In this document: in pieces, positions 41,239 to 59,500 of the stretch | Layout of the letters: each line of letters starts with the position of its first letter | Position numbering within the stretch: position 1 is the first letter of the stretch | Source of the DNA: Macrostomum hystrix | Lineage: Eukaryota; Animalia; Platyhelminthes | Reading direction: 5' to 3' | DNA: 64,000 nucleotides | Assembly (NCBI GenBank): GCA_950097015.1 | Contig: CATNEN010000025.1 | Location: 4,526,001 to 4,590,000, forward strand | The notes under the pieces: model-generated | Told to the model about the DNA's origin: nothing | Database searches by the model: none | Seen by the model: the letters and a program-made list of their open reading frames with translations, nothing else | Translations under genes and position numbers: made by a program

Positions 41239-43297
41239 AGCTTCACTCCTTATCTGGCTGACTCTCCAGCTTCACTACTTATCTGTCTGACTCTCCAGCT
41301 TCACTCCTTATCTGGCTGACTCTCCAGCTTCACTCCTTATCTGTCTGACTCTCCAGCTTCACTCCTTATCTGGCTGACTCTCCAGCTTCACTCCTTATCT
41401 GTCTGACTCTCCAGCTTCTCTCCTTATCTGGCTGACTCTCCAGCTTCTCTCGCTATAATAAGTCCTCAGACACCAACCAACAATCAAGCAGACAGAAGAA
41501 AAACAAATTTACAGCAGGGTTTCCGTCAAAATAAAAAATAAACACGTAGTAAAGCCTACCTATTTCAAGGAGCAAACAGACAGATAAATAAATTTAAATT
41601 CGATTCACCTTAACGAGGAAGTGTGCAGAACAAAAGCGCCAACATAAAAATGAGTCAAAATATTGTTTTGGGGAAAGGCAAAAATTATAGCATATCTAAT
41701 TGGAAAGCAGTGTATTTGATTGCACAAAAGTGGCAGTTAGTGGCAGAAAGGTTAGGCTACAATACAATAGTAGTTTGATCGATTTTTTACTGCAGATAAA
41801 ATGATGAGTAGTAACGGATTGCTCATCTCTATTTGGAAAATCTATATAAATATATTAAGATAACTACACTTGCTTTTCGATTAAAAAAATCTGAAATGAA
41901 TGCATTTTTGAATTATAGATGAAGGACAAGACATGAACACGGGTTAAAGACTGGATGCAGTATGTATGCTAACACATAAATAAACAAGCATATGTACAAA
42001 TAAGGCCTGAAGCTTCTGATAAAGTGACAAGACAAATAATAGAGGCAAAGAGCTATTTAAAAAATCTGGGAAACATTTTCAACTAAATAAGAACCAAAAG
42101 AACCGATAGAAGCCAAATAGTTATACTTACATTTTTACAGCTCGCACATAGACAACTATATATTGATAGTTCCCTATATATGTGTATAAATGTAGCTACA
42201 CAATCGCCAATCCCCTTCAAAGACTTCAATTTACGTTATTTGGATTATGACCCTTGGACTTATGGAAAATATGTGATTTGTTTCAAAATCCGGAAAAATA
42301 ATCGAAAACCCGGAAAACTTACGTACAACCCGGGAAAAATACGTAAAACCCGGAAAAATACGTAAAACCTGGAAAAATACGTAAAACCTGGAAAACTTAC
42401 ATACAACCCGGAAAAAATACGTAAAAAACCCGAAAAAATTCGTTAAACCCGGAAAAAATACGTAAAACCTGGAAAATTCGCGCATAAAATTCAGAAACCT
42501 AACGAATTTAAATTAGGACCTAGAGTGAACTAAAACCGAGAACACGATCAAAATTGAAAGATGTTACATTACTCTAGCAATTAGATTGAATATCGAACAA
42601 TTAGATTAGCATTGGTGTTCTCGTGTATATATAAGGCCCAAATTTTTATGTACATATAATTACTGTCTATTCTTAACTGAAGATAAATGAGAGAATCATT
42701 TAATTGCAACTAGTCAACTGTCAAGCAGATGATAAAAATATATTATAAATGAAATAGTTATTTTTCGAAACAAACAAATAAGAAATGAATTTCATTAGAC
42801 GGAATGATGCAGAGACAGATGACACAGATGTTAAGTAACTAAAAAGCATAATTAGATGGCCACAACATTTACAAACAGACAACAAAGCGTTGATTTGAAA
42901 AGCCAAGAACAATATAGGAAACACAGACACCTTATTGTATGAAAAACAAACGGTGATAAAAAACCAGAAGGAAAATCAACATTCTTTCTTCGAACACGAC
43001 CCATTGGCGATGAATGATGGAGTTTAAAATTGTCACTCTAGCGTAGATCGCCCCTCCTCTAAAAAACCGACAAGTCGAAATTCTTATTCGCTACCTCCAC
43101 ATACTACTTGTCTGGCGATTGCCAAGCTCCAGTAGTTAGATTGGGACATGCGCACGAGAAATACAAAATAAGCGGGAAAATATTATTTTAGCTTTAAAAG
43201 CACACCGAGGAGATCGACAGATGATCCGAAGCTAGAGAGACAGCGAGGAAAGTAAAAATAGACGAGCGATTCACACTCTAACCCAGCTCGTGGTCGT
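41239..43297. repeat. Tandem segmental duplication, copy 2
   Basis: About 5 differences seen by eye (ccatgg/ccttgg, cccgg/cctgg, ccagg/ccaag, +1 C near 43051, one satellite variant). Confidence 0.95.
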
Positions 43298-43790
43298 TAG
43301 AAACAGCGGCAGCGGTGCCGATGGCGGCGTCGGCAGATTCAACAATGGGCAGAACGGTAAAACGTCCGACGTGAGTTGCGCAACCGGAACTGCGCCGGTC
43401 AGCTGCGGAGATGCGAGGTTTTTGAAATGATGAAGAGGGACATTTTCTTATGATGTTACTTGCAGTAGGACTAACTAAAAAAATTGTTCAGAATTAAAAA
43501 AAGGAGAAAAGTTAAGGAGAAATCAATGCATAGAAATTAAACAACCAACCAAATTTGTGAGAACTTGCTTTTTTGAAACTACACCTGCGTGTACTATTGA
43601 TATGTAAGCAGAGATTGTGTTTAGTTCTTAAATGGCAATGTAAAAAGCTAAGAGAAAAACAACCAAGCCCAGAAGATGTGAAAGTAGCAACTACCGGTAC
43701 CAAAACGCGTATCTCATATTCAAATGGAGGAACAAAAAATACAGGGTTGAAATCCCAAAGCTGGACTAACTCGAGATAACCCAGTCTCAA

Positions 43791-46700
43791 TCATTGGACT
43801 GCCCGATCAGGCGGGCCGCTTTGCAAACGCGTCGGGCGAACGGCCGCGGCGCCAATTCTGCCTGCCGATATGTTGCGAAATATGTTAATTATAGGAACTA
43901 TATCACATGCAAATGTGAAAAACTAAAATTAATTTTCTAGTTTACTTTTGATTCAAAACTGCGGATTCGAACCTACGACGTCGCTTTTCAAACAAAAAAT
44001 TGTAATAGTAAATACTTCATGGACAAGTTAACAAATCGAAAAATGCAACACAACAAATATTTTTTGCAACTGTACATAAACACTTTTGAAGTGCGAGCAC
44101 TGTGTAGACACTAGCATTATTTAACACATACAAGTCCATGCTTTAGCAAGCAATTCCTGTACCAATTAGTGATTTATTGAGCAAGCTGAGCACTGGCTCA
44201 TCTTGCTGTTCCTGCAGCTGCAGCGCTGAGTCATTAGCTGCTAGACATTCGCCAGTAAGATCGGCAAAAGAAAACGCAAAGTAACCCCTGCATTAAACAT
44301 CGTTTCTGTCTCTAGCGCATTAAATATTCAGTTCTGACACCACACCCTGTCTGTTGGTAGACTTTGAGCTGACACCCTGTCTGTTGGTAGACTTTAAGCT
44401 GACATCACACCCTGTCTGTTGGTAGATTTTGAGCTGACACCCTGTCTGTTGGTAGAATTTGAGCTGACACCCTGTCTGTTGGTAGACTTTGAGCTGACAC
44501 CCTGTCTGTTGGTAGACTTTGAGCTGACACCCTGTCTGTTGGTAGACTTTGAGCTGACACCCTGTCTGTTGGTAGACTTTGAGCTGACACCCTGTCTGTT
44601 GGTAGACTTTGAGCTGACACCCTGTCTGTTGGTAGACTTTGAGCTGACACCCTGTCTGTTGGTAGACTTTGAGCTGACACCCTGTCTGTTGGTAGACTTT
44701 GAGCTGACACCCTGTCTGTTGGTAGACTTTGAGCTGACACCCTGTCTGTTGGTAGACTTTGAGCTGACACCCTGTCTGTTGGTAGACTTTGAGCTGACAC
44801 CCTGTCTGTTGGTAGACTTTGAGCTGACACCCTGTCTGTTGGTAGACTTTGAGCTGACACCCTGTCTGTTGGTAGACTTTGAGCTGACATCACACCCTCT
44901 CTGCTGGTAGACTTTGAGCTGACATCACACCCTGTCTGTTGGTAGACTTTGAGCTGACATCACACCCTGTCTGTTGGTAGACTTTGAGCTGACATCACAC
45001 CCTGTCTGTTGGTAGATTTTGAGCTGACACCCTGTCTGTTGGTAGACTTTGAGCTGACACCCTGTCTGTTGGTAGACTGAGCTGACACCCTGTCTGTTGG
45101 TAGACTTTGAGCTGACACCCTGTCTGTTGGTAGACTTTGAGCTGACACCCTGTCTGTTGGTAGACTTTGAGCTGACACCCTGTCTGTTGGTAGACTTTGA
45201 GCTGACACCCTGTCTGTTGGTAGACTTTGAGCTGACACCCTGTCTGTTGGTAGACTTTGAGCTGACATCACACCCTCTCTGCTGGTAGACTTTGAGCTGA
45301 TTTATTACTACCCTAAACAATCGCTAGCAAGCTGCCAAGCTGTGGATTTATTGAACCCGTGGAAAACTACCTGAAAGCTGTCAAAAGCATTTCCTTTTCT
45401 GACTCACTTGTTGTCGCAGCTCCGGGTACCTCAGCGACAGCCTTGTCACCAAGGTCGTTAGCGACTGCGGCAGCCGACTGCACGGCGGTCAGGACGGCCA
45501 GCACATCGTCCAGCCGCATCTGGGGCCCGCCGTCGAATGCCAAGCAGGTGACGATTGGAGTTGCAGCGGCCTGGTTCGTCTGTCGCCTAGGCCTCGGGCA
45601 GAGCAGCAGGCAGCGGCCGGCATCCAGGGCGGGCAGAGCCTGCGGCGGCAGACCCGGCAGCAGCAGCTGGGCGGAGCCGGAGTGCGGCAGCGCCTGCGTG
45701 CAGCCCTGCGGCTGCCGGTGGGGAAAAAACGAAGTCGCCGTTGGAGTGGTCGGCGGCGCCGGCGACTCTGCGCGCCGGCGCTGCTGCTGCTGGCCGCTCT
45801 CGTTGCGAAATCGAATCACAGGAGAGACCGGCGCCGAGATGGCGGCGTCGGCTACGTCAAGAGATTGCAGGAGCGGTGACGGCGCGTGATGCGGTAGATC
45901 GATTGATATGGGCGTCATTGAAGAGATTGCAGACGCTGTCACGGTGGCCGCGGCTGATGCCGCTGAAAAATTGCGGATTGAGAATGGTCATGGATAGCGG
46001 ACTGAGAATGGTCATGGATAACTGACTGAGAATGGTCATGGATAGCGGACTGAGAATGGTCATGGATAACTGACTGAGAATGGTCATGGATAGCGGACTG
46101 AGAATGGTCATGGAAAACTGACTGAGAATGGTCATGGATAGCGGACTGAGAATGGTCATGGATAACTGACTGAGAATGGTCATGGATAACTGACTGAGAA
46201 TGGTCATGGATAACTGACTGAGAATGGTCATGGATAGCGGACTGAGAATGGTCATGGATAACTGACTGAGAATGGTCATGGATAACTGACTGAGAATGGT
46301 CATGGATAACTGACTGAGAATGGTCAGGGATAGCTGACTGAGAATGACCATGGATAGCGGACTGAGAATGACCATGGATAGCGGACTGAGAATGACCATG
46401 GATAGCGGACTGAGAATGGTCATGGATATCAGACTGAGAATGGTCATGGATAGCGGACTGAGAATGGTCATGGATAACTGACTGAGAATGGTCATGGATA
46501 GCGGACTGAGAATGGCCATGGATAGCGGACTGAGAATGGTCATGGATAACTAAATGAGAATGGTCATGGATATCGGACTGAGAATGGTCATGGAAAACTG
46601 ACTGAGAATGGTCATGGATAACTAACTGAGAATGGTCATGGATAACTAAATGAGAATGATCATAGAGAGCGGAGAGCTAAAGTAGAAACACGTTTCGCTA

Positions 46701-47051
46701 ATAAACTCACGAGAAGTTGTTGCAATATAGTCGTCAAAGTGCAGCCCGTTGCCATAGTGATGATGGCCATTGGATATGGCTGGCATGGAGACAGACATCA
46801 AAGGTGGCATGTTGAGCACATCCGGCTGCTGACGATAGCTCGGACTGCCAGGCAGGTCGAAGTCGGTAAAGCTGCTGACAGCGCCGCCTGTGCTTAGAAA
46901 CTCTTTCATTGGCTGCTGGCACAGGCAATCAACCATGCGCTGCTGCTGCTGGTGCTGTTGCTGCTGATCGACTGCTGTGCTGCAATTGCTGCTTACTTGC
47001 CTGGAGACAGCGGCTGAAGATGTAGCTGGGGAAGCCAGACCGCCGCCACCT

Positions 47052-47083
<32 letters not shown>

Positions 47084-50000
47084 CGCCTCCTCCTCCCAGC
47101 GGCCATTGTAGTCGTCGCGCTCTTTGATGACGCGCCGCTTAGCCTCGGCCCATCGGCGGGCCTGGAGTCCCAGGCGGACAATGCTGGTGTCCAGCTCGAC
47201 GTCCTGCTCCTGCTCCGAGTCGCGCAGCAGGTCCATGAAGTGGTTCCAGATGCCCGCCAGCACCTGCGCGGGTGAGGAAAGGCGTGAGGCTATGTATAAA
47301 GGCATGTAGCTATGAAAAAAGGAATGTAGCTATGAACAAAGGAATGTTGCTATGGACAAGGGAATGTAGCTATGAACAAAGGAATGTAGCTATGAACAAA
47401 GGAATGTTGCTATGGACAAGGGAATGTAGCTATGAACAAAGGAATGTTGCTATGGACAAAGGAATGTAGCTATGAACAAAAGGAATGTTGCTATGGACAA
47501 GGGAATGTAGCTATGAACAAAGGAATGTTGCTATGGACAAAGGAATGTAGCTATGAACAAAAGGAATGTTGCTATGGACAAGGGAATGTAGCTATGAACA
47601 AAGGAATGTTGCTATGGACAAAGGAATGTAGCTATGAACAAAAGGAATGTTGCTATGGACAAGGGAATGTAGCTATGAACAAAGGAATGTTGCTATGGAC
47701 AAAGGAATGTAGCTATGAACAAAAGGAATGTTGCTATGGACAAGGGAATGTAGCTATGAACAAAGGAATGTTGCTATGGACAAAGGAATGTAGCTATGAA
47801 CAAAAGGAATGTTGCTATGGACAAGGGAATGTAGCTTTAAAGAAAGGAATGAGACTTTGAACAAAGAAATGAAACTATAAATAAAGGGATGTAGCTTTGA
47901 ACAAAGGAATGGAATGTTAAGTTAAGGAATGATACTAAATAAATGATCGAGCTTCAGGGCTCACTAACCTTCTTCCTGTAGTACAACAGCTGGTTGCGCA
48001 CGCTGTTCACGACCTTCTGCCTCAGCCGCCGCAGCTGATCGGCGCTCAGTCCGGGCGCGTCAGACTCGGCCAGATCGGCGAACGAGTTGACGACATTCTC
48101 CAGATCTTCGTCTATGAAGCAGTCGAGCTGGAATTCGAAGCCAACGCCTGGCAGGATGCGCATCAGCTGCTGAAGCTGCCGGTCATTCACCACCAGACGG
48201 AAATCGGCCACGTGATAATAGCGGCCGGGATCGCCGACGTACTCGATGGCCGTGGCTGACGATGAGCAACGCTTCGTCGGAGCAGCCGATGTTGTCATCG
48301 TTGTGGCCGACGTTGAATCGCTGCTAGAGATCTGCTGTTGCTGTTGCTGCTGCTGCTGCTGCTGCTGAGTCGAAGACGAAGTCACAGTCGGCTGTGTCAG
48401 CGAGGCGGCGGTGTCGTCATCCTGCCATCGAACAGTCTGGGACATGCGAACCAGCTGCACCTGCACCGGGATCGGCTTCAGGTTGAAAATCTGCAGCGAC
48501 AGCAGCTCCTCGGCGGTGGGGCGAAAGTCGGGCAGCGGATGCGTGCAGGTGAAGAATATGTCCCGAATCTCTGCGCTCTCAAGCCTGGTTTGTCGGTGGG
48601 CAGAGAAACAGAGAAGCTAAGCAGTGAGTAGGTTTCAAAGCGTAGATATTGAGTAGGTTTTAGAGTCGATATTGAGTAGGTTCCAAAGTAGATATTGAGT
48701 AGGTTTCTAACTAGATATTGAGTAGGTTTCTAACTAGATATTGAGTAGGCTTCTAACTAGATATTGAGTAGGCTTCTAACTAGATATTGAGTAGGCTTCT
48801 AACTAGATATTGAGTAGGCTTCTAACTAGATATTGAGTAGGCTTCTAACTAGATATTGAGTAGGTTTCTAACTAGATATTGAGTAGGCTTCTAACTAGAT
48901 ATTGAGTAGGCTTCTAACTAGATATTGAGTAGGCTTCTAACGAGATATTGAGTAGGCTTCTAACTAGATATTGAGTAGGTTTCTAACTAGATATTGAGTA
49001 GGTTTCTAACTAGATATTGAGTAGGCTTCTAACTAGATATTGAGTAGGTTTCTAACTAGATATTGAGTAGGTTTCTAACTAGATATTGAGTAGGCTTCTA
49101 ACTAGATATTGAGTAGGTTTCTAACTAGATATTGAGTAGGCTTCTAACTAGATATTGAGTAGGCTTCTAACTAGATATTGAGTAGGCTTCTAACTAGATA
49201 TTGAGTAGGCTTCTAACTAGATATTGAGTAGGCTTCTAACTAGATATTGAGTAGGCTTCTAACTAGATATTGAGTAGGCTTCTAACGAGATATTGAGTAG
49301 GCTTCTAACTAGATATTGAGTAGGCTTCTAACTAGATATTGAGTAGGCTTCTAACTAGATATTGAGTAGGTCTCTATAGCTCACCTGTCCAGCACCTGAG
49401 GTGGAGTGTTGCTAGCGATTCTCTGCCAGACGTCCATGAAATTCTGGCACTCCTGATATGGCACAGTGTTGGTGACTAGCTCCACCATGAGCAAGCCGAA
49501 AGCGAAGATGTCCACCTTCTCGTCGTATCTCTCCTGCAGCATCTCGGGCGCCATGTAGCCAAGGGTGCCGAGCATGGTCTTGCGGGTCTGGGTCTTGGCC
49601 GTGGCCAGGCCAAAGTCGCCCAGCTTGATGTTGTAGTATTCGTCAGGATTCTCTCCGTCGGCAATGAACACGTTCTCCGGCTTTAGGTCGCGGTGAATCA
49701 CCGGCGGATTCATCCTGGGAGGGAGGGGGAGGCTGCGTTTCTTAGAAACCTTAGAATCCGGCGGAATTCTTTAGGGGTCTGACTCTCGGTTGAAGTCGCA
49801 AACTCTGTTGGGGCTGGAGCTTCAGGATCGAATTCTGCTGGGGCTGGAGCTTCAGGGTCTAACTCTGCTGGGGCTGGAGCTTCAGGGTCTAGCTCTGCTG
49901 GGGCTGGAGCTTCAGGGTCTAGCTCTGTTGGGGCTGCAGCTTCAGGATCGAATTCTGCTGGGGCTGGAGCTTCAGGGTCTAACTCTGCTGGGGCTGGAGC

Positions 50001-53000
50001 TTCAGGGTCTAAGTCTGCTGGGGCTGGAGCTTCAGGGTCTAACTCTGCTGGGGCTGGAGCTTCAGGGTCTAACTCTGCTGGGGCTGGAGCTTCAGGGTCT
50101 AGCTCTGCTGGGGCTGGAGCTTCAGGGTCTAACTCTGCGGGGGCTGGAGCTTTAGGGTCTCTCTGCTGGGGCTGGAGCTTCAGGGTCTAACTCTGCTGGG
50201 GCTGGAGCTTCAGGGTCTAACTCTGCTGGGGCTGGAGCTTCAGGGTCTAAGTCTGCTGGGGCTGGAGCTTCAGGGTCGAATTCTGCTGGGGCTGGAGCTT
50301 CAGGGTCGAATTCTGCTGGGGCTGGAACATAGGAATCGAATTATTTCAGGTTTAAATCTTCAGGGTTTGATGTTCGGGGAAGTGAGGATAATTCTTGAAG
50401 ATTCGTAATGTACTCGTAGTTCAGATAGCAGATTTACTGCTCAGATGATTTTAAGGCAACGATACAATGCTCAGATCTGAAACCTTTGCATCGCAAGATC
50501 GAAGCTACTAATCAATTTAACGTTTGAAATATAATATTAAGAATCAGAAGGCTAGCAGAGAAGACACAATGCCTCAAATTAGACTTGACGTCAATATGAA
50601 ACTCATTGCACGGACTAAATGCCTCTTATCACTATTGGCCATTGGCTATTCACTATTGGCTATCTTGGCTGATATGACATTATCTATATCGACTTTTATT
50701 ACACCGCCTTTTTGTTTGTTTGTTCTAACAGGGAGAAGAGAGGAATACGAATAGTTTGAGGGGCATTAATATACTAATGGTACCGGTTCGAAAAAGATAA
50801 AAGACTATCAATAAAATAGCATATAATAGCAGCACTGCTTTAAAAAGACAAAAATATAACTGGAATGTGGTAAATTTTGTTACTAAACAAAGTGTGAATA
50901 TTCGGGTTCTGTGTGAATATTCGGGTTCAGTGTGAATATTCGGGTTCTGTGTGAATATTCGGGTTCTGTGTGAATCTTCTGGTTCTGTGTGAATATTCGG
51001 GTTCTGTGTGAATATTCGGGTTCTGTGTGAATATTCGGGTTCTGTGTGAGTATTCGGGTTCTGTGTGAATATTCGGGTTCTGTGTGAATATTCGGGTTCT
51101 GTGTGAATTGTCTGGTTCTGTGTGAATTGTCTGGTTCTGTGTGAATTGTCTGGTTCTGTGTGAATATTCTGGTTCTGTGTGAACTTTCAGGTTCTGTGTG
51201 AAGATTCGGGTTCTGTGTGAATATTCTGGTACTGTGTGAAGATTCGGGTTCTGTGTGAGTATTCGGGTTCTGTGTGAGTATTCGGGTTCTGTGTGAGTAT
51301 TCGGGTACTGTGTGAGTATTCGGGTTCTGTGTGAGTATTCGGGTTCTGTGTGAGTATTCGGGTTCTGTGTGAATTGTCAGGCTCTATGTGAATATTCGGG
51401 TTCTGTGTGAATATTCGGGTTCTGTGTGAATATTCGGGTTCTGTGTGAATCTTCTGGTTCTGTGTGAATATTCGGGTTCTGTGTGAATTGTCTGGTTCTG
51501 TGTGAATAGTCTGGTTCTGTGTGAACTTTCAGGTTCTGTGTGAAGATTCGGGTTCTGTGTGAATATTCTGGTACTGTGTGAAGATTCGGGTTCTGTGTGA
51601 GTATTCGGGTTCTGTGTGAGTATTCGGGTTCTGTGTGAGTATTCGGGTACTGTGTGAGTATTCGGGTTCTGTGTGAGTATTCGGGTTCTGTGTGAGTATT
51701 CGGGTTCTGTGTGAATTGTCAGGCTCTATGTGAATATTCGGGTTCTGTGTGAATATTCGGGTTCTGTGTGAATATTCGGGTTCTGTGTGAATCTTCTGGT
51801 TCTGTGTGAATATTCGGGTTCTGTGTGAATATTCGGGTTCTGTGTGAGTATTCGGGTTCTGTGTGAATTGTCAGGCTCTATGTGAGTATTCGGGTTCTGT
51901 GTGAATATTCGGGTTCTGTGTGAGTATTCGGGTTCTGTGTGAATTGTCAGGCTCTATGTGAATATTCGGGTTCTGTGTGAATATTCGGGTTCTGTGTGAA
52001 TATTCTGGTACTGTGTGAAGATTCGGGTTCTGTGTGAATATTCTGGTACTGTGTGAAGATTCGGGTTCTGTGTGAGTATTCGGGTTCTGTGTGAGTATTC
52101 GGGTTCTGTGTGAATATTCGGGTTCTGTGTGAGTATTCGGGTTCTGTGTGAGTGTTCGGGTTCTGTGTGAGTATTCGGGTTCTGTGTGAATATTCGGGTT
52201 CTGTGTGAGTATTTGGGTTCTGTGTGAGTATTCGGGTTCTGTGTGAATATTCGGGTTCTGTGTGAGTGTTCGGGTTCTGTGTGAGTATTCGGGTTCTGTG
52301 TGAGTATTTGGGTTCTGTGTGAGTATTCGGGTTCTGTGTGAATATTCGGGTTCTGTGTGAGTGTTCGGGTTCTGTGTGAAGATTCAGGTTGTTTTAGATG
52401 ATTTTGGGTGCTGTTTGAAGATACGCCAACTCACTTGTGATGCATATGCCGCAGTCCCTCCAGAATCTGCTGCATCCAGGACTGGAAGACGCTGAATTCA
52501 ACCACAGCCTCTCTAGTCTGCTCATTGTAGAATGTCTTCATCTTCTCTTTCAGGGTGCCCTCGCTCATGAACTCGGTCACAATGACCGTGGCTTTGACCT
52601 TTTCGCCTTTCTCGCCATTCTCGTCTAGCTCAAAGTAGCAGTCGAGCAAGTCGTAGTAGCGAACAATGTTCGGGTGTTCGCACTTGATCATCATCTCGAC
52701 CTGGGCAATAAGACAGAGAGCTTATGATTTGAGTCCTGATCAATAGATATTTCAAGTAAGATTGGCATTCTAAAGAATTTGGGGAGCTTCGCAAATGGAG
52801 CTTGAAACTTCCCAAGGACAAAAAGAAAAAATAAATTACTTGAATTTGTTTTAGTTTAATTTTTACTTTTGCTCGAAATGGGACCTATAATACTTTTAAT
52901 TCCAAATTATTTAGGCATCGCTAAAACATTCAACATTTGAGTCCTGCTCAAACGAGCGTTGGGATCTCGGTTAAACTTTGTCTTGGTGGAATTTCAGTCT

Positions 53001-56000
53001 AGAAAGATTTGAGTCCAGTCCTTAAAACCTCACCTCAGGGGTCGCGTTAACGCGTTTACCCCTCGCACCAAGGTCCCTGAGCTCGATTCCGCGGTGAGAC
53101 CACATTCATTTGGGGCGCAGCCGCGGAGAGAAGGCTTGGGGGCTTGTCGCGCAATTTACGCCCCTGAGGGCCAACCTCCAAGGCACAGTGATAGTGTACT
53201 CTGTCTGACGATGAGAAAGTCAGGGCAGATGTACACACCTGCGTGAGCGTATGCCTGAGTACAGTGTGCGTGTGTGCTCAGGAGGCCTCCTCGCTGGCTG
53301 CGGGTCTAGTATCACCAAATGATGTGATCATCACGCCAGTGCCTGCAGCGCTCCTGCAACTATTATTATTAATGCCTCACCTCCTTGCGGACCTGCTCCC
53401 TCTCGGCTGGCTTGTCCTTTCCAACTTGGAATTTCAGCTCGCACCAGGCGATGGGCCGGCCCTGCTCGCGGTCGTAGCCGCGGTAGACAATCTTGTAGGC
53501 ACCTTCGCCGCACTTCAAATTGTGCTTGATCCAACGGCCGCAAGGGCTGACGGCGATGCCGCGCTGCTTCAGCTGCAGCTCCATCTGGTGCCGGCGCCAC
53601 ATCTGGGCGTCCCGCCGGCGCTGCCGCTCCTTCTGCTTCTCCTCGCGCGACCTGGCCGCAGACGGCTGCGGCTGAGCTGTTGACGACGTGGTCGACGATT
53701 GTCGCGACACTTTACCGTGCGGCGAAGGAGGCTGCGGCTGCAAATGCGCCGCGGCTGCTGACGCCGACGTTGCCGACGACGCTGGCGTCGCAGGGGCAGC
53801 CGAAGTCGACGTCGACGCTTCATCGGCAGACGAAGATGACAAAGCGCCGCCGATTAAGGAGCCGACAGAGAGCGACGTCGCCGATACAGCCGGCGAGGAC
53901 GGCGACGGCGAGGTCGACGCAGAGGCGAATGTAGGAATAGTAGCCATGGGAGCTTCCAGCGATGACGACCCGGCTGCCAGGTGGACGTCGCCATTGACAA
54001 CAGCGGCTAGAGCGGTGGCCGGAGTGGCGGCCGGTGATGCAGCGGGAGCCGGAGGGACATCATCGCTGCCGTCAGGGTTGATAGCGGCCGAGTCGGAGTC
54101 GGCAGCCAAGACAACGCCAGGCGCCCTGACGGCTGGGCACGCTGGCGAAGTCAGAATCTTCGTCGTTGAATCATTTATCTTGGACGAAGAAGCGGCGATG
54201 GCATTGTCAGCGGCGGCGGCTGCGTCAGCGGAAGTTGACGCTGACGAACCGTCGATGGCGGCCGCTCCGCTGCCCATTCGATGCGCTGCCTCCGGCTCCG
54301 TCAGCGACAGTCTTCGAATTCTTGATTTAAACAAAAAATGTTACTTTTTAGTTTAACTTTAACCTAATTGAGTTAGAATGAGTATTACAGTATAAAACTA
54401 TGACTATCGATGAAGGCAGAATATATAATTGAAATATAGAAGCTTGATCTCCGTGATTCGCCTCATTAAGACAACTCAAATTCTAATGGACTATGTAATA
54501 GGTAGAATGTAAAATGTACTTTTCTCTTATTTTATACATATTAGATACAGATATAAGGCTGATCAATCTCAGTGTCACGTGGGCAGAGGTACCAGGCGGA
54601 GCGGTGGGTCACTGTCACACCACTTGCACAGATCTACTCTGGTGGAGTGGGGTTGCAAGTGACTTGTTTTATAGATAAAAACCTATAGTGCGTACTTCAG
54701 ACTTGGTTCGGTGACTTGTAACGCTTTTGGCGCCAGTTTAAACTTCAGTTTACGTAACCCTGGCAACACTGAGCATTATTTTCGTAATAATATAATTAGC
54801 AGGTTTTTTGCAAAACGGTAAGAAGGTTAAAAAAAATTTAGACTTGCGCGATTGAAAAAAAATTCATACACGCAGACCAAGCTAAGAAGTCAAATTTCAT
54901 TCTAAGAACTTTTAGCATTTTAACTGCTATCTAACCAGCTAAATGTGCTCTTAATTTATAAGCAGAAGAGGAGTTGCAACAAGAGCAGAAGAGTTGCAAC
55001 AAGAGCAGAAGATTTGCAACAAGAGCAGAAGAGTTGCAACAAGAGCAGAAGAGTTGCAACAAGAGCAGAAGATTTGCAATAAGAGCAGAAGAGTTGCAAC
55101 AAGAGCAGAAGATTTGCAACAAGAGCAGAAGATGAGTTGCAACAAGAGCAGAAGAGTTGCAACAAGAGCAGAAGAGTTGCAACAAGAGCAGAAGAGGAGT
55201 TGCAACAAGAGCAGAAGAGTTGCAACAAGAGCAGAAGATTTGCAACAAGAGCAGAAGAGTTGCAACAAGAGCAGAAGATTTGCAACAAGAGCAGAAGAGG
55301 AGTTGCAACAAGAGCAGAAGATGAGTTGCAACAAGAGCAGAAGAGTTGCAACAAGAGCAGAAGAGTTGCAACAAGAGCAGAAGAGGAGTTGCAACAAGAG
55401 CAGAAGAGTTGCAACAAGAGCAGAAGATTTGCAACAAGAGCAGAAGAGTTGCAACAAGAGCAGAAGATTTGCAACAAGAGCAGAAGAGGAGTTGCAACAA
55501 GAGCAGAAGAGTTGCAACAAGAGCAGAAGAGGAGTTGCAACAAGAGCAGAAGAGTTGCAACAAGAGCAGAAGAGTTGCAACAAGAGCAGAAGATTTGCAA
55601 CAAGAGCAGAAGATTTGCAACAAGAGCAGAAGATTTGCAACAAGAGCAGAAGAGTTGCAACAAGAGCAGAAGATTTGCAACAAGAGCAGAAGAGGAGTTG
55701 CAACAAGAGCAGAAGAGTTGCAACAAGAGCAGAAGAGTTGCAACAAGAGCAGAAGAGTTGCAACAAGAGCAGAAGAGTTGCAACAAGAGCAGAAGAGTTG
55801 CAACAAGAGCAGAAGAGTTGCAACAAGAGCAGAAGAGTTGCAACAAGAGCAGAAGAGTTGCAACAAGAGCAGAAGAGTTGCAACAAGAGCAGAAGAGTTG
55901 CAACAAGAGCAGAAGAGTTGCAACAAGAGCAGAAAGAATCTAATAAAAAAGGCAACTTTGAATTCGTCAAAAAGCAAATATAGCAGAATCCTGTTGATAA

Positions 56001-56506
56001 TTAGATAAAAGCCAGGCTCACTCCACGAGTCCGGAGGTGGAGTAGCCGCCGTTGGCTCCGTTCATAGTGGCAGCCAGCGTCAGCGCGGAGTCGTCCAGCA
56101 CCGTCTCCCGGATGGTGACCCGCTTGCGCAGCATCCGCACACCGCCGGCCAGGCTGGAGCGCAGGGCACTTTTACCCGGCAGTCTAGAGGCTTGCGGCAG
56201 CGGCGGCGGCGGCGCCGGCGGCGCTGGCGGCGGTGGCAACGGCGGCAGCTTGGCGGCGACTAATCCAGTCGTTGGCGTTAAAGCCGGCGTGTTGCACGGC
56301 GGCTCTGTAGCGGACGAATAAGAATGGCACCAGCCGTTGCCGTCAAAGCTGAGGCTGTCAGTGGTGGACGTCATTAGAAGCGTGGCCGTCGTTGGCAGAG
56401 TCAGGGACGCCGCCTCTTGCGGTTGCTCCTGCCGCTGCTGCGACGGCGGCAACGATGCGGACAGGCCCAGCGGTCTCGTTGGTTGTCCAGCAGCGCCGTG
56501 CGCCAT
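43791..56506 (-). CDS. WNK: Divergent WNK (with-no-lysine) Ser/Thr kinase, 1297 aa; exons 56506-56022, 54320-53381, 52700-52435, 49714-49385, 48584-47969, 47263-46711, 45962-45408, 44240-44163, 43861-43791
   Basis: SPCGRWIKHNLKCGEGAYKIVYRG (Lys in beta2) and IAWCEL (Cys at the usual beta3 Lys position) are diagnostic of WNK. Also HPNIVRYYD, VIVTEFMSEGTLK, PPVIHRDLKPEN, DFG, YMAPEM, RYDEKVDIFAFG, PYQECQN and a CCT-like segment after the kinase. Exon sum 3894 nt is in frame. First and last two exons are less certain. Confidence 0.9.
44335..45300. repeat. 30-bp minisatellite (gagctgacaccctgtctgttggtagacttt) with 35-bp variants, WNK intron 7
   Basis: About 31 units; 10-aa period in the ORF track. 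Confidence 0.95.
45975..46655. repeat. 24-bp minisatellite (tggtcatggatagcggactgagaa), WNK intron 6
   Basis: About 28 units; 8-aa period. Confidence 0.95.
47290..47905. repeat. 20-bp alternating monomers forming an 81-bp higher-order repeat, WNK intron 5
   Basis: ggaatgtagctatgaacaaa alternates with ggaatgttgctatggacaag/a; 27-aa period in ORF 47432-47860. Confidence 0.92.
48625..49372. repeat. 23-bp minisatellite (ttgagtaggcttctaactagata), WNK intron 4
   Basis: About 32 units; fills intron 48585-49384. Confidence 0.95.
49800..50335. repeat. 30-bp minisatellite (gggctggagcttcagggtctaactctgctg), WNK intron 3
   Basis: About 18 units; 10-aa period. Confidence 0.93.
50900..52385. repeat. 19-bp minisatellite (gggttctgtgtgaatattc), WNK intron 3
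   Basis: About 78 units with recurring variant blocks. Confidence 0.95.
53037..53374 (+). mobile_element. tRNA-derived SINE, family B, antisense in WNK intron 2, 9-bp TSD
   Basis: Head with A box partly deleted, B box GAGCTCGATTCC, (ATT)n tail; TSD CCTCACCTC at 53028-53036 and 53375-53383. Confidence 0.85.
54962..55935. repeat. 20-bp minisatellite (gagttgcaacaagagcagaa) with 23-bp variants, WNK intron 1
   Basis: About 47 units; explains the QQEQKSCNK and LLLLQLFCSCC pseudo-ORFs. Confidence 0.95.
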
Positions 56507-59500
56507 TCTTACGTGAAGACTGCAACTTTATTAATAGTTTTTTTAATCATTTATTTTTTACAGCAGCCTACTCTTAGTAGGCTAAAAAGTAATTAATAAC
56601 CGAATTTTCTACGTCATATTATTAAGAATGATATAGTCTCCTGAAATTAATTACCACCCACTATAATAATGAACACTAATAATCTAATTAGGCGTGAAGA
56701 CATGAAATTTGAGATTAGTTATTTTGCAGACTAATAAATCTTGGATCAAGCGCAGACTAATTGAGTACTTCAATTTATACTTTGTCTAGGCTTGCCTAAT
56801 TAATCATAGGCTTAGGAGCTCATATCCAGATCTTTATCAAAGTCTCTCTTCATCATCAGCAGATATGCTTTAGATCAATTTTCACCTAGCTTTAAGCTTC
56901 GGCACGAGATTAACGTTTACTCTTCGACTAAAGAATTTGTACTGTGGGATCGAATGATCGAATTTTTAAATCGAATGAAAATTCCATTCACGTTTCTCAT
57001 TACTTTTATTACTGAAGCAGGAATAACTGTGTGGCCCGGCTTTATGGTTAAACTGTGCGTTTCTTCTAAATTAATTAAATTTGGCGCCAATTTAAAACAC
57101 GAAATATTTTTAAATTACAAATGGATTTTCGAGTCTCGGATTCTGAGAAAATCTAGTAAATTAAACTGTTGTTTCTCACTTTGTGTGCCTTCAGTCCGCG
57201 CACAGTTCTGCTGGGAATGCTTAGCTAAACGAAACGAAATATAAGTGCATATCACAATGAGCAGGTCGACTCAAGGCAAGCTAAATGAGTACCGTCACAC
57301 GGACAGGGTCCTTGAAGAACACTTCTTGCCCCCATATCTTTTACCAAGCGTTCGAATAGCACCTGCCTGAAGAGCGAGTAAAATTTCAAAGAGACACTAT
57401 AGCGAACAATAGTGAGCCTTCTTACTTTGAATTGGACGATAATCCAACCACTGAAGTTAGTAGATTTTCTCCAGGCAGATTAATGTATGTAAAAAACTTT
57501 TGTTGCTAGGAAATGGATTTAGTCGACCACTGGCCCAGTGTAAGTCTATTTAAACTTGATGGATGGGAAATGTCGACTAGAAGTCTTACTAAAAGCTTAC
57601 ATAACGGGCAAATTAATTTAATAATGCAGAATCTAATGACCTTCAAGCGTCAACGTGCTCGCAGCCATCTGTTTTCGCTCCAGTGGAGGCCGAAAAAAAT
57701 TGCACCGATGATGACATTTGTTTAAAACAGAAATCCACTTTTGCAAACAAAAGTAAGCTAAACACAATACTGGATTGAACACTCAATACACTCGCTGTGT
57801 GCACTTTTGCACTCGCTATTGAAAAAGTTTGCTGTCATTTTATTAAATTCAGAATAGGAAGCAAAAAGGACAGAATGAAAAGTGCGCGAAAGAAACTTTT
57901 AAAGGTCACTTCCTCGATTTTGGAAAGCGCTGATGTCAGGAAAAGACATGAAGATACAAGAGAGCGAGAGAAAAAGTGTGTCAAAATATAGTTTCCTTGC
58001 AAAAGCATGTCTGCGGTGTTCAAATGTGTCCATAATATCAACTGCTATTGAAGCATGCGCGAAAGAAACCCGATCTGTGACATGCCAGAAACCAGAGAAG
58101 TAATAGCCTATAGCACACTGGCGATCAAAGAGATATTGTGCCGCTAATATATTAATAAATATTTGCATGTATTTTATGCAGGGTGGCGAGTGCGGTGTTA
58201 ATGATTCTACAAAAATACAAAGTACTCATTTATGTTTATATAGACTGCGCTTTAAACTATTTTTCTCGCCCTCAAAGACCAGGAGTTAGAAGAGACGCTG
58301 AATATATTATTTTGTTGGCCAATATTATAGGCACAAAATAGACACGCTTTGCTAGGCATGGAGTATAGACACTAGAACTAGTACGAGCGTATCTATGGGC
58401 GCGAGCAAACAATCGTTGTCAAGAGTTGCAGAGGCTGCTTCTTCCATTGGCTACAATTAAACGATCATAGCCATAAACAAAAACGAAACACACACCTAGA
58501 GAATAATCGTTTAACAAGAGTACATAGTCAATGGTGGAAGGCAAAGCCAGAACCCTTTGTCTTGCATAAAAACCATAAACAATTGATGGTTAAAGATCTG
58601 GACAATGCTTTTCAGCTTAAGTAAAAGATAATCCCTCATAGCTTATGAGGGATGAGGGATTTATACAAATACAACCCGTAAAAAGCTATGCATCATCTCA
58701 CTTAAATTCCGTCATTCTCCGGGATTAAACCTAATAAATCCCGGAGAATGTGACATTTGTCTATGGCCCCTGTCATGCCTCAGGCGGTTAGTCGCCTTGC
58801 GGGGTGTGGAGGGCAGAGCCGGCCCACATATTCCACTTTGTCAAACTTCGAAGTATGCAAGTTGTGGAAATAATTTTTGTCTATGGCTGCAACATAGATT
58901 TCAATCTATGTAATAGATACAAAACGAAAAGCAGATTTTACGGACGGTTCCACAGATTCAGTTCTAAAGATTATAATTCTTCAACTTCGCTTGCAGGATG
59001 GATAATTCACCCGCTTATATACTCAACACGCTTGTCGACCATTCAGTAGATTTTGTTGGAGACTACGATCCCAACGTTCTACGACCTGAGGATTTGGATG
59101 CGCTACTGTATTGGATAGTAGAGCTGATATGCGGAATCCGTACGCCCTCGCCGAGCTACGAAAGGGAAACGAAGTCTACATGCATCGATCGTCATCTGAT
59201 GACGCCGTTTGCCAAGCTCTATTAGACATAGCAGCTGTGAAGGCCTTAAACGATCATTATTTTCCTTATGAATAAATGCTTCCGTAAATTTTGCATTGGC
59301 ACATTTTTAATTGCTTAACTCGTATTCGTTGAATTGTCAAACTTGTCAAAATCTAGTTGACATTTCTTTAGGCATTGCAATCCCTGATTACCATGACTAT
59401 GGATTTCCGGGATTTAAATATTTTCACATTTTCTGTGAAGATTGAAATTCCTGGGTACCCACATGCATAGTTTCTCACGCGCAGCAACAAAAGGGAAGGT

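What the first reader, a model, noticed from the sequence alone, without database searches (positions are those of the whole stretch)
49609..49690. WNK kinase with natural DFG instead of DLG: predicted chloride-insensitive WNK
Seen: beta2 Lys (53494-53492) and AWC Cys (53443-53441) define a WNK, yet the Mg-binding loop is KLGDFGLAT (49617-49609) and the catalytic loop is HRDLKPEN rather than HRDLKCDN. The activation segment is TQTRKTMLGTLGYMAPE, with Thr at the autophosphorylation Ser position. Established: WNKs are chloride sensors; the Leu of DLG lines the Cl- site, and the Leu-to-Phe mutants (WNK1 L369F, WNK4 L322F) reduce chloride inhibition and activate the kinase. Inference: a natural paralogue uncoupled from intracellular chloride, possibly an adaptation for osmotic or ion regulation or a new signalling role. 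A chloride channel gene in the same window is probably coincidental.
Basis: partly seen in the sequence, partly recalled or inferred. Interest (0 to 1): 0.7.

Follow-up and report, generated by a model that had tools for sequence, protein, structure and literature searches.

The report
Flatworm WNK kinase with natural DFG
This is an intact, expressed WNK kinase gene of a Macrostomum flatworm. Its DFG in place of the usual DLG is real but not a private oddity: every flatworm WNK examined has it, along with other changes at sites where mutations make mammalian WNKs insensitive to chloride and potassium, so flatworm WNKs may sense ions differently, which nobody has tested.

Summary
On the minus strand the window holds a multi-exon gene (about 56.5 to 43.3 kb). 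Its kinase domain has the WNK hallmarks: a catalytic Lys in beta2 (53494-53492) and Cys at the usual beta3 Lys position (53443-53441). It also has HRDLKPEN, D-F-G (49617-49609) and Thr at the WNK1 Ser382 position.

Each kinase exon matches WNK1/WNK3 best among solved structures. A spliced contig confirms the exon junction and expression. The TTT codon is unchanged in four organisms' data.

The interpretation needs correcting. The gene is not an odd paralogue beside a normal WNK. Its nearest relatives are Macrostomum lignano proteins, then the WNKs of Schistosoma, Clonorchis, Paragonimus, Dicrocoelium, Echinococcus, Hymenolepis and Mesocestoides. In 9 of 9 aligned flatworm WNKs, DFG, Thr382, Tyr/Cys283 and Ile299 are present, plus Gly at the WNK1 Glu388 position. 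Eleven canonical animal WNKs keep F283, L299, L369, S382 and E388. The schistosome kinome tables contain no GDLGLA kinase.

L369F and E388A/Q are published mutations that keep activity and reduce ion inhibition. Ion-insensitive flatworm WNKs are therefore a reasonable hypothesis, but untested. A CCT-like fold and a C-terminal RFTV motif suggest that signalling to SPAK/OSR1 is kept. This is a new variant of a known kind, of moderate interest.

The parts
56021..56509 (-). Upstream coding exon (low-complexity N-terminus); approximate limits
   Evidence: tblastn of M. lignano P0160 residues 6-143, 49% identity
53381..54319 (-). Exon with the N-terminal low-complexity region plus beta1-beta3 of the kinase domain (SPCGRW, GEGAYK, IAWCE). 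The donor gtgagg follows 53381.
   Evidence: PDB phmmer of 53381-53620 hits only WNK3/WNK1, best E 4.6e-11
53492..53494 (-). Catalytic Lys in beta2 (WNK1 K233 position)
   Evidence: column table
53441..53443 (-). Cys at the canonical beta3 Lys position (WNK1 C250)
52435..52700 (-). Exon for alphaC to alphaE. Tyr at the WNK1 F283 position is at 52658-52656; Ile at the L299 position is at 52583-52581.
   Evidence: PDB best hits WNK1 at 3.7e-08; 98.9% identical to M. lignano P0152
49385..49714 (-). Exon for the catalytic loop, DFG, activation segment and alphaF
   Evidence: Pkinase 7.6e-25; WNK1 99.8 bits against 59.7 for the best non-WNK; spliced contig ends at both exon borders
49672..49695 (-). 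Catalytic loop HRDLKPEN (canonical animal WNKs have HRDLKCDN)
49609..49617 (-). GAC TTT GGC = D-F-G; Phe at the WNK1 L369 position
   Evidence: unchanged in contigs of four organisms; Phe in 9 of 9 flatworm WNKs
49576..49578 (-). Thr at the WNK1 Ser382 (activating autophosphorylation) position
   Evidence: HMMER alignment to WNK1; column table
49558..49560 (-). Gly at the WNK1 Glu388 position (GTLGY instead of GTPEF)
   Evidence: Gly in 9 of 9 flatworm rows, Glu in 32 of 34 non-flatworm WNK rows; role of E388 from PMC13397483
47969..48584 (-). Exon for the end of the kinase domain, a poly-Q linker and a CCT-like 1 / autoinhibitory-like domain (about 48268-47970)
   Evidence: AF2 model pLDDT 64; VIA-align Z 8.2 to the WNK1 autoinhibitory domain 2lru and 7.8 to WNK2 CCTL1 6fbk, next unrelated hit 5.2; hhalign E 1e-3 but probability only 22%; no Pfam OSR1_C hit
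46691..47263 (-). Next coding exon (acceptor cag before 47263); its end is approximate
   Evidence: 63% identity to P0160 residues 820-993
45412..45924 (-). C-terminal region exon; approximate limits
   Evidence: tblastn with P0160 residues 1006-1170, 60% identity
43278..43402 (-). Terminal exon ending in a stop codon. It encodes HVGRFTVLPIVES, an RFxV-type SPAK/OSR1 docking motif, with RFTV at 43364-43353.
   Evidence: matches the tail of M. lignano P0152; similar (R/K)FTV motifs occur near the C-termini of cestode and trematode WNKs

Best explanation
The locus is one of several Macrostomum copies of the flatworm WNK kinase. It is an intact, spliced and expressed gene of at least eight coding blocks.

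Shown:
- It keeps what makes a WNK catalytically special: the Lys in beta2, Cys in beta3, HRD, and the Asp of the D-x-G motif.
- A CCT-like domain follows the kinase domain, and there is a C-terminal RFTV motif.
- All flatworm WNKs examined share a derived set of changes around the ion-regulatory sites of mammalian WNKs. These are L369 to F, F283 to Y (Macrostomum) or C (parasites), L299 to I, S382 to T, P387 to L/V and E388 to G. Other animal WNKs keep all of these positions invariant.

Inferred:
- Phe at 369 fills the hydrophobic chloride pocket, and there is no carboxylate at 388. The chloride- and potassium-stabilised inactive state of canonical WNKs is therefore probably weakened or lost in flatworm WNKs.
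- These kinases would then autophosphorylate on the activation-loop Thr with little or no ion inhibition.
- They would still signal to SPAK/OSR1 through the RFxV motif.
- The change would date to before the split of Macrostomorpha and Neodermata.

The confidence given covers the whole statement. The identity part alone (a flatworm-wide DFG-type WNK) I put at about 0.9, and the loss of ion inhibition at about 0.5.
For: Gene model and expression. A spliced contig in X5 joins 49385 to 48584, and depth is zero in the flanking introns.

WNK identity: the PDB matches of the N-lobe and alphaC exons are WNK1/WNK3 apart from weak unrelated rows, and exon C scores about 40 bits higher on WNKs than on any other kinase. 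The WNK clade separates from outgroups at 97/97.

Flatworm-wide state: the exhaustive search, names, motif census and column tables. M. lignano has three DFG paralogue groups. The schistosome kinome supplement holds GDFGLATH four times, VAWCE four times and GDLGLA zero times.

Functional background: the Cl- site residues and L369F (PMC7606576). E388A and E314A/Q keep activity but lose K+, Cl- and water inhibition, and L295F also reduces K+ inhibition (PMC13397483).

Architecture: CCT-like fold with Z 8.2 and 7.8; RFTV motif.

Purifying selection: 28 of 35 variable sites are third codon positions.
Against: - No biochemical data exist for any flatworm WNK.
- The three pocket changes could compensate for each other. 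F283 to Cys in the parasites makes room for Phe369, so a chloride site could persist.
- L371 and the backbone amides that ligate Cl- are retained.
- Mammalian WNK3 shows that chloride sensitivity in cells is not predicted by pocket residues alone.
- The tree does not resolve where the long flatworm branches attach. Flatworm monophyly has only 74/26 support. A flatworm-plus-animal clade is merely not rejected (p-AU 0.44).
- The CCT-like assignment rests on a model with pLDDT 64 and mid-range Z-scores. Pfam OSR1_C does not hit.
- I could not search the Macrostomum genome for a canonical DLG-type WNK. A second WNK locus 3.4 Mb away was not inspected.
Confidence: 0.6

Rival explanations
1. This is the flatworm WNK orthologue, but it is still chloride-regulated. 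The pocket has co-evolved, with Phe369 accommodated by Ile299 and by Cys or Tyr at 283. On this view DFG is a neutral or compensated change without physiological meaning.
For: L371 and the Gly-Leu backbone that binds Cl- are kept. Three pocket residues changed together rather than one. DFG has arisen at least 7 times among WNK-like kinases of protists, plants and flatworms, which suggests the position is tolerant.
Against: A single L369F in WNK1 is enough to raise autophosphorylation and reduce Cl- inhibition. Flatworms also lack E388, a second independent sensitivity determinant. Eleven other animal WNKs keep all of these residues invariant.
Confidence: 0.3
2. One reading: a neofunctionalised, chloride-blind paralogue that coexists with a canonical DLG WNK in the same genome.
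For: Macrostomum has several WNK copies. Another WNK locus is noted 3.4 Mb away, and I could not read its DLG/DFG state.
Against: All Macrostomum copies recovered (P0152/P0160, P0161, P0162) are DFG. All trematode and cestode WNKs recovered are DFG. The schistosome kinome tables contain no GDLGLA kinase. The diverged copies laid on the window keep TTT.
Confidence: 0.08
3. It is an artefact or a dead gene: a sequencing error at the codon, a pseudogene, or a kinase of another family that only resembles WNK.
For: None was found. The only weak points are the missing Pfam OSR1_C hit and the failure of a kinome classifier to place a 338-residue schistosome WNK-like fragment.
Against: The same codon appears in independent data sets of four organisms, and a spliced transcript contig exists. 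The reading frames are open, the splice sites are clean, and there is third-position bias. The best PDB hits of the kinase exons are WNKs, and the clade support is 97/97.
Confidence: 0.02

Closest known systems
Mammalian WNK1/WNK3/WNK4 kinase domains (e.g. PDB 6cn9, 5drb, 5o26) and their chloride-insensitive mutants WNK1 L369F, WNK3 L295F and WNK4 L322F
   Same: Catalytic Lys in beta2 and Cys in beta3. The domain order is kinase, then CCT-like domain, then RFxV motif. About 45-50% identity in the C-lobe exon. The window's Phe is exactly the engineered L369F state.
   Different: The Phe is natural. It is accompanied by Y283, I299, T382, L387, G388 and HRDLKPEN, and by an insert between beta4 and beta5. 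The protein is short, about 1,100-1,200 residues judging from M. lignano P0152 and P0160.
Public flatworm WNK entries: M. lignano A0A1I8GZD7 and A0A1I8GJT5; S. japonicum KAH8853002 ('WNK4'); C. sinensis GAA48562 ('WNK1'); E. granulosus CDS20373 ('WNK1'); P. heterotremus KAF5402540; S. mansoni/S. haematobium Smp_154440
   Same: The same derived motif set: GEG(A/G)YK, AWCE, GDFGLAT, RKTMLGT(L/V)G(F/Y)MAPE and HPLxxFRPT. The M. lignano proteins are 92-99% identical in the kinase exons.
   Different: The window copy is not identical to any M. lignano entry, so it is a congener or a further copy. Parasite WNKs are 2,000-2,600 residues long and have HRDLK(A/S)(D/E)N and Cys283. None of these entries is annotated for the DFG or Gly388 peculiarity. 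I found no paper on it.
WNK1 E388A and WNK3 E314A/Q mutants (PMC13397483)
   Same: The acidic residue after GTP in the activation segment is lost. Flatworm WNKs have Gly there.
   Different: These are laboratory mutants of otherwise canonical WNKs. Flatworms combine this loss with Phe369 and with P387 replaced by L/V.
Other natural DFG WNK-like kinases: euglenozoans (Peranema, Rhabdomonas, Lacrimia), the diatom Conticribra, Heterosigma, and the plant Penstemon
   Same: WNK signature with a Leu-to-Phe change in the D-x-G motif.
   Different: These are independent origins: at least 7 changes are needed on the tree. They keep GTPEF (E388) and mostly Ser382, and apart from Heterosigma (AWC) they have AWN rather than AWC.

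Membership tests
WNK (with-no-lysine) protein kinases | Catalytic Lys moved to beta2 (GxGxxK), with no Lys at the canonical beta3 VAIK position | tested here: met
   GEGAYK with Lys at 53494-53492, and IAWCE with Cys at 53443-53441. The column table gives K233/C250 in all flatworm rows, whereas the outgroups have G/K.
WNK (with-no-lysine) protein kinases | The kinase domain is closest in sequence to WNKs and falls inside the WNK clade | tested here: met
   The best PDB hits of every kinase exon are WNK1/WNK3. The WNK clade, including the flatworm proteins, separates from outgroups at 97/97. Its place relative to other animal WNKs is unresolved. The tree used M. lignano full-length proteins as stand-ins, because exons were not joined.
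WNK (with-no-lysine) protein kinases | DLG in place of DFG, with the Leu lining the chloride site (typical of canonical WNKs) | tested here: not met
   DFG at 49617-49609. Of 101 WNK-signature proteins fetched, 76 have DLG, 24 DFG and 1 DMG. The sample is biased towards the query. The feature is therefore typical of the family but not universal.
WNK (with-no-lysine) protein kinases | CCT-like 1 / autoinhibitory (PF2-like) domain directly after the kinase domain | tested here: inconclusive
   No Pfam OSR1_C hit. hhalign against canonical CCTL1 gives E 1e-3 but probability 22%. An AF2 model with pLDDT 64 has as its top structural matches the WNK1 autoinhibitory domain (Z 8.2), WNK2 CCTL1 (Z 7.8) and a further WNK1 domain, PDB 5g3q (Z 5.9), above unrelated folds at 5.2 or less.
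WNK (with-no-lysine) protein kinases | RFxV/I motifs that dock the CCT domain of SPAK/OSR1 | tested here: met
   RFTV at 43364-43353 in the terminal exon. It is conserved in the M. lignano P0152 tail, and similar (R/K)FTV motifs occur in cestode and trematode WNKs. Binding itself was not tested.
WNK (with-no-lysine) protein kinases | Phosphorylatable activation-loop residue at the WNK1 Ser382 position | tested here: met
   Thr at 49578-49576, and Thr in 9 of 9 flatworm WNKs.
WNK (with-no-lysine) protein kinases | Inhibition of autophosphorylation by chloride (and potassium) | not testable with these tools
   Sequence-based inference only. Three of the four hydrophobic pocket residues and E388 are substituted.

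The most novel reading that the evidence does not exclude
Flatworms (at least Rhabditophora, from Macrostomum to flukes and tapeworms) have only 'ion-blind' WNKs. An ancestral double change, Leu369 to Phe and Glu388 to Gly, abolished chloride and potassium inhibition. The WNK-SPAK/OSR1 pathway of a whole phylum would then be controlled by something else, such as crowding or osmotic pressure alone, or upstream phosphorylation of the Thr sites. That would be a natural loss-of-sensing experiment in animals with protonephridial osmoregulation.
Probability: 0.4. Interest if true: 0.65.

Novelty: new variant of a known kind. Interest (0 to 1): 0.5.

Why it matters
Chloride sensing through the DLG pocket is treated as a conserved property of animal WNKs, from Drosophila to mammals (PMC7606576). 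Here a whole animal lineage naturally carries the residue that is used experimentally to make WNKs chloride-insensitive. It also lacks the glutamate recently tied to potassium, chloride and water inhibition.

If flatworm WNKs are ion-insensitive, they give a natural system for separating ion sensing from osmotic or crowding activation of WNKs. They would also show how osmoregulation is wired in flatworms. In addition, the WNK active-site region of parasitic flukes and tapeworms would differ from the host enzyme.

If they remain chloride-sensitive, they show how the pocket can be rebuilt around a Phe. Either result is obtainable with a simple recombinant-kinase assay.

Tried and rejected
- **Word-index search.** The search with exon C alone found one 96-residue fragment. 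The tool's length window excludes full-length relatives, so I used the exhaustive search.
- **Multi-kinase hits.** Many top hits of the exhaustive search were multi-kinase-domain proteins with summed scores. I set them aside and used single-stretch hits plus a WNK-signature filter.
- **Pfam on the post-kinase region.** No OSR1_C hit even at E 10. A profile of the flatworm tail against PDB sequences gave nothing.
- **Structure of the tail.** Single-sequence AF2 was poor, with pLDDT 48. The 7-row alignment gave pLDDT 64. Foldseek E-values were not significant. VIA-align gave the WNK CCT-like domains as the top three matches.
- **Frame error in my scripts.** In some searches exon D was translated out of frame (start 48581 instead of 48583). 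This produced no exon D matches and a spurious RFNV. I corrected it.
- **Joined exons.** Exons were searched one by one by reference. Stored full-length M. lignano proteins (P0152, P0160, P0161, P0162) served as stand-ins for alignments and trees.
- **Not possible here.** I could not scan the whole Macrostomum genome for a DLG-type WNK, or read the second WNK locus noted 3.4 Mb away.
- **Literature.** Searches for WNK with flatworm, Platyhelminthes, planarian, Macrostomum or DFG/DLG found no paper on this feature. That is absence in the held library only.
Full report
**What is in the sequence**

On the minus strand the reported codons are exactly as described. AAG (Lys of GEGAYK) is at 53494-53492 and TGC (Cys of IAWCE) at 53443-53441. 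HRDLKPEN is at 49695-49672 and GAC TTT GGC (D-F-G) at 49617-49609. The activation segment reads TQTRKTMLGTLGYMAPE.

Stop-to-stop translation and the splice sites give a clean model for the kinase domain:
- exon ending at 53381 (donor gtgagg);
- exon 52700-52435 (acceptor cag, donor gtgagt, phase 2);
- exon 49714-49385 (donor gtgagc, phase 2);
- exon 48584-47969 (donor gttagt).

tblastn with a full-length Macrostomum lignano protein maps further colinear blocks. These are 56509-56021, 47263 to about 46691, and about 45924-45412. A terminal exon lies at 43402-43278. The introns are filled with minisatellites.

**Is it real and expressed?**

Contigs of four public runs were laid on 49371-49800. 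Run X5 has no depth outside 49385-49714. One of its contigs, identical to the window, continues beyond 49385 with the reverse complement of the first bases of the 48584 exon. That splice is therefore used, and the gene is transcribed.

A second X5 contig is about 90% identical. It continues beyond 49714 with an exon-B-like end, so a sister copy is spliced at the same place.

No differing letter is listed at 49609-49617 in any run. Yet diverged copies cover those positions: X10 (37 differences in 301 bases), X11 (30 in 225) and X5 record 9 (12 in 123). The tool withheld four weakly supported rows, which is a small caveat.

Of the 35 variable positions listed, 28 are third codon positions. A sequencing error or pseudogene is excluded as far as sequence data allow.

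**What family is it?**

Pfam sees a protein kinase domain in the two central exons. Against all PDB sequences:
- the N-lobe piece hits only WNK3/WNK1;
- the alphaC exon hits WNK1/WNK3 first;
- the C-lobe exon scores 99.8 bits on WNK1, against 59.7 for the best non-WNK kinase.

The word-index search was blind to full-length relatives, so I ran the exhaustive search with the C-lobe exon.

The nearest protein is a Macrostomum lignano entry, 96% identical over that exon. The window is therefore from a Macrostomum flatworm. This fits notes by other agents on the same genome.

The next nearest single-domain hits, at 51-56% identity, are the WNKs of other flatworms:
- Paragonimus and Dicrocoelium;
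- Schistosoma japonicum (named WNK4);
- Clonorchis (WNK1);
- Echinococcus (WNK1);
- Mesocestoides and Hymenolepis.

**The key correction: DFG is the flatworm state, not a private one**

Every flatworm WNK recovered has GEG(A/G)YK, AWCE, GDFGLAT and RKTMLGT(L/V)G(F/Y)MAPE.

M. lignano has three paralogue groups (P0152/P0160/P0002, P0162 and P0161), and all are DFG. The window copy is 92-95% identical to them in the C-lobe exon, so it is a congener's copy or a further copy.

A column table keyed to WNK1 numbering was built from 43 WNK rows and 3 outgroups. It gives, for the positions tabulated:

| Group | 283 | 299 | 369 | 371 | 382 | 387 | 388 |
|---|---|---|---|---|---|---|---|
| 11 of 11 canonical animal WNKs (vertebrates, amphioxus, mussel, rotifer, nematodes and unnamed rows) | F | L | L | L | S | P | E |
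| 9 of 9 flatworm WNKs | Y or C | I | F | L | T | L or V | G |

The supplementary kinome tables of S. haematobium and S. mansoni hold GDFGLATH four times and VAWCE four times, but never GDLGLA. The main text and tables list one classified WNK, Smp_154440, and one 338-residue WNK1-like fragment. Schistosomes thus appear to have no canonical DLG WNK.

Outside flatworms, DFG has arisen independently in euglenozoans, a diatom, Heterosigma and Penstemon. At least 7 changes are needed on the tree, and DMG occurs in chytrids. Those proteins keep GTPEF.

**Phylogeny**

In a 46-row maximum-likelihood tree, the WNK clade including the flatworm proteins is separated from three outgroup kinases at 97/97. 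The Macrostomum and neodermatan groups sit on long stems (0.93 and 1.09), and their attachment is unresolved. Flatworm monophyly is present but weak (74/26). Holding flatworms together with the other animals costs 1.09 log-likelihood units (p-AU 0.44).

Orthology to the animal WNK is therefore consistent with the data but not proven. The shared Cys250, found otherwise almost only in animal WNKs, points the same way.

**Architecture beyond the kinase domain**

The segment at about 48268-47970 aligns with the post-kinase segment of parasite WNKs. By profile-profile comparison it aligns with the canonical CCT-like 1 domain at the expected strands, with E 1e-3 but probability only 22%. Pfam OSR1_C does not hit.

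An AlphaFold model from the 7-row alignment (pLDDT 64) has these top three structural matches:
- the WNK1 autoinhibitory domain (Z 8.2, rmsd 3.1, 86 residues);
- WNK2 CCT-like 1 (Z 7.8);
- a further WNK1 domain, PDB 5g3q (Z 5.9).

Unrelated folds score 5.2 or less. I count this as probable.

The terminal exon encodes HVGRFTVLPIVES. This RFxV motif is shared with the M. lignano P0152 tail. Cestode WNKs have GNRFTVV and trematode WNKs have KFTVV. The schistosome kinome table also lists an OSR1/gck-3 orthologue. Coupling to SPAK/OSR1 is therefore probably retained.

**How it most likely works**

Established background:
- Cl- binds the backbone amides of G370 and L371 in a pocket lined by F283, L299, L369 and L371, and stabilises inactive WNK1. 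L369F raises autophosphorylation (PMC7606576).
- L369F and WNK3 L295F are used as chloride-insensitive mutants, and L295F also reduces potassium inhibition.
- E388A and E314A/Q keep full activity but lose potassium, chloride and water inhibition (PMC13397483).

Shown here: flatworm WNKs naturally carry Phe369 and Gly388, with two further pocket changes, while the catalytic residues are intact.

Inferred: the ion-stabilised inactive state is weakened or lost. The kinase would self-activate on the loop Thr with little ion inhibition and still signal through its RFxV motif.

The main rival is compensation inside the pocket, for example Cys283 making room for Phe369, with chloride sensing kept. 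I give it about 0.3.

**Comparison with the known, and novelty**

The protein is a WNK by the defining Lys placement, by similarity and by clade. It fails only the typical DLG feature. The flatworm sequences are public and named WNK1 or WNK4, but I found no paper noting their DFG, Gly388 or pocket changes.

I therefore rate it a new variant of a known kind. It is a lineage-wide natural counterpart of the laboratory ion-insensitive mutants. Interest is moderate (0.5), because the functional claim is untested and the underlying sequences are not new.

Stored M. lignano proteins served as full-length stand-ins. A frame slip for exon D in my scripts was corrected.

Noticed in passing
window 48625-49370, 49801-50326, 50892-52390, 54967-55934, 47278-47911, 46000-46663: Almost every intron of this gene is filled by a long, well-kept minisatellite: 23-nt x32, 30-nt x18, 19-nt x79, 20-nt x47, 40/81-nt and 24-nt x28 arrays. 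Several read as long open frames on both strands.
   Followed up: partly
window 49384-49714 (contigs of runs X5, X10, X11): Organism A's transcript contigs hold at least three versions of this exon: identical, about 90% and about 83% identical. These match the three M. lignano paralogue groups (P0152/P0160, P0162, P0161). All keep the DFG codons.
   Followed up: partly
M. lignano proteins P0002 and P0165: Public gene models look faulty. P0002 (A0A1I8GJT5) skips the first 26 residues of the alphaC exon. P0165 looks like a frameshifted, fused model of a P0162-like copy.
   Followed up: no
window 43809-43862 and 43278-43402, minus strand: There are two candidate alternative C-terminal exons. One resembles the P0160 tail (AAAVRPTRL) and the other the P0152 tail carrying RFTV. 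This suggests isoforms with and without the SPAK/OSR1 docking motif.
   Followed up: partly
window about 45412-45700, minus strand: The C-terminal segment RCLLLCPRP...IVTCLAFDGGPQMRLDDVLAVL is conserved with M. lignano P0162 and P0160. By eye it has the strand-strand-helix pattern of a second CCT-like domain. This was not tested.
   Followed up: no
No link to the WNK gene is apparent.
   Followed up: no
same genome, 3.42 Mb beyond the window end (note s1-405159): Another WNK locus is noted by the scan (an ATG-less first exon, a candidate spliced-leader start). Its DLG/DFG state is unknown to me.
   Followed up: no
proteins P0224, P0243, P0138, P0177, P0214, P0217, P0228, P0127: Natural DFG also occurs in WNK-like kinases of Penstemon, the diatom Conticribra, Heterosigma and three euglenozoans. 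DMG occurs in chytrids. All of these keep Glu388.
   Followed up: partly
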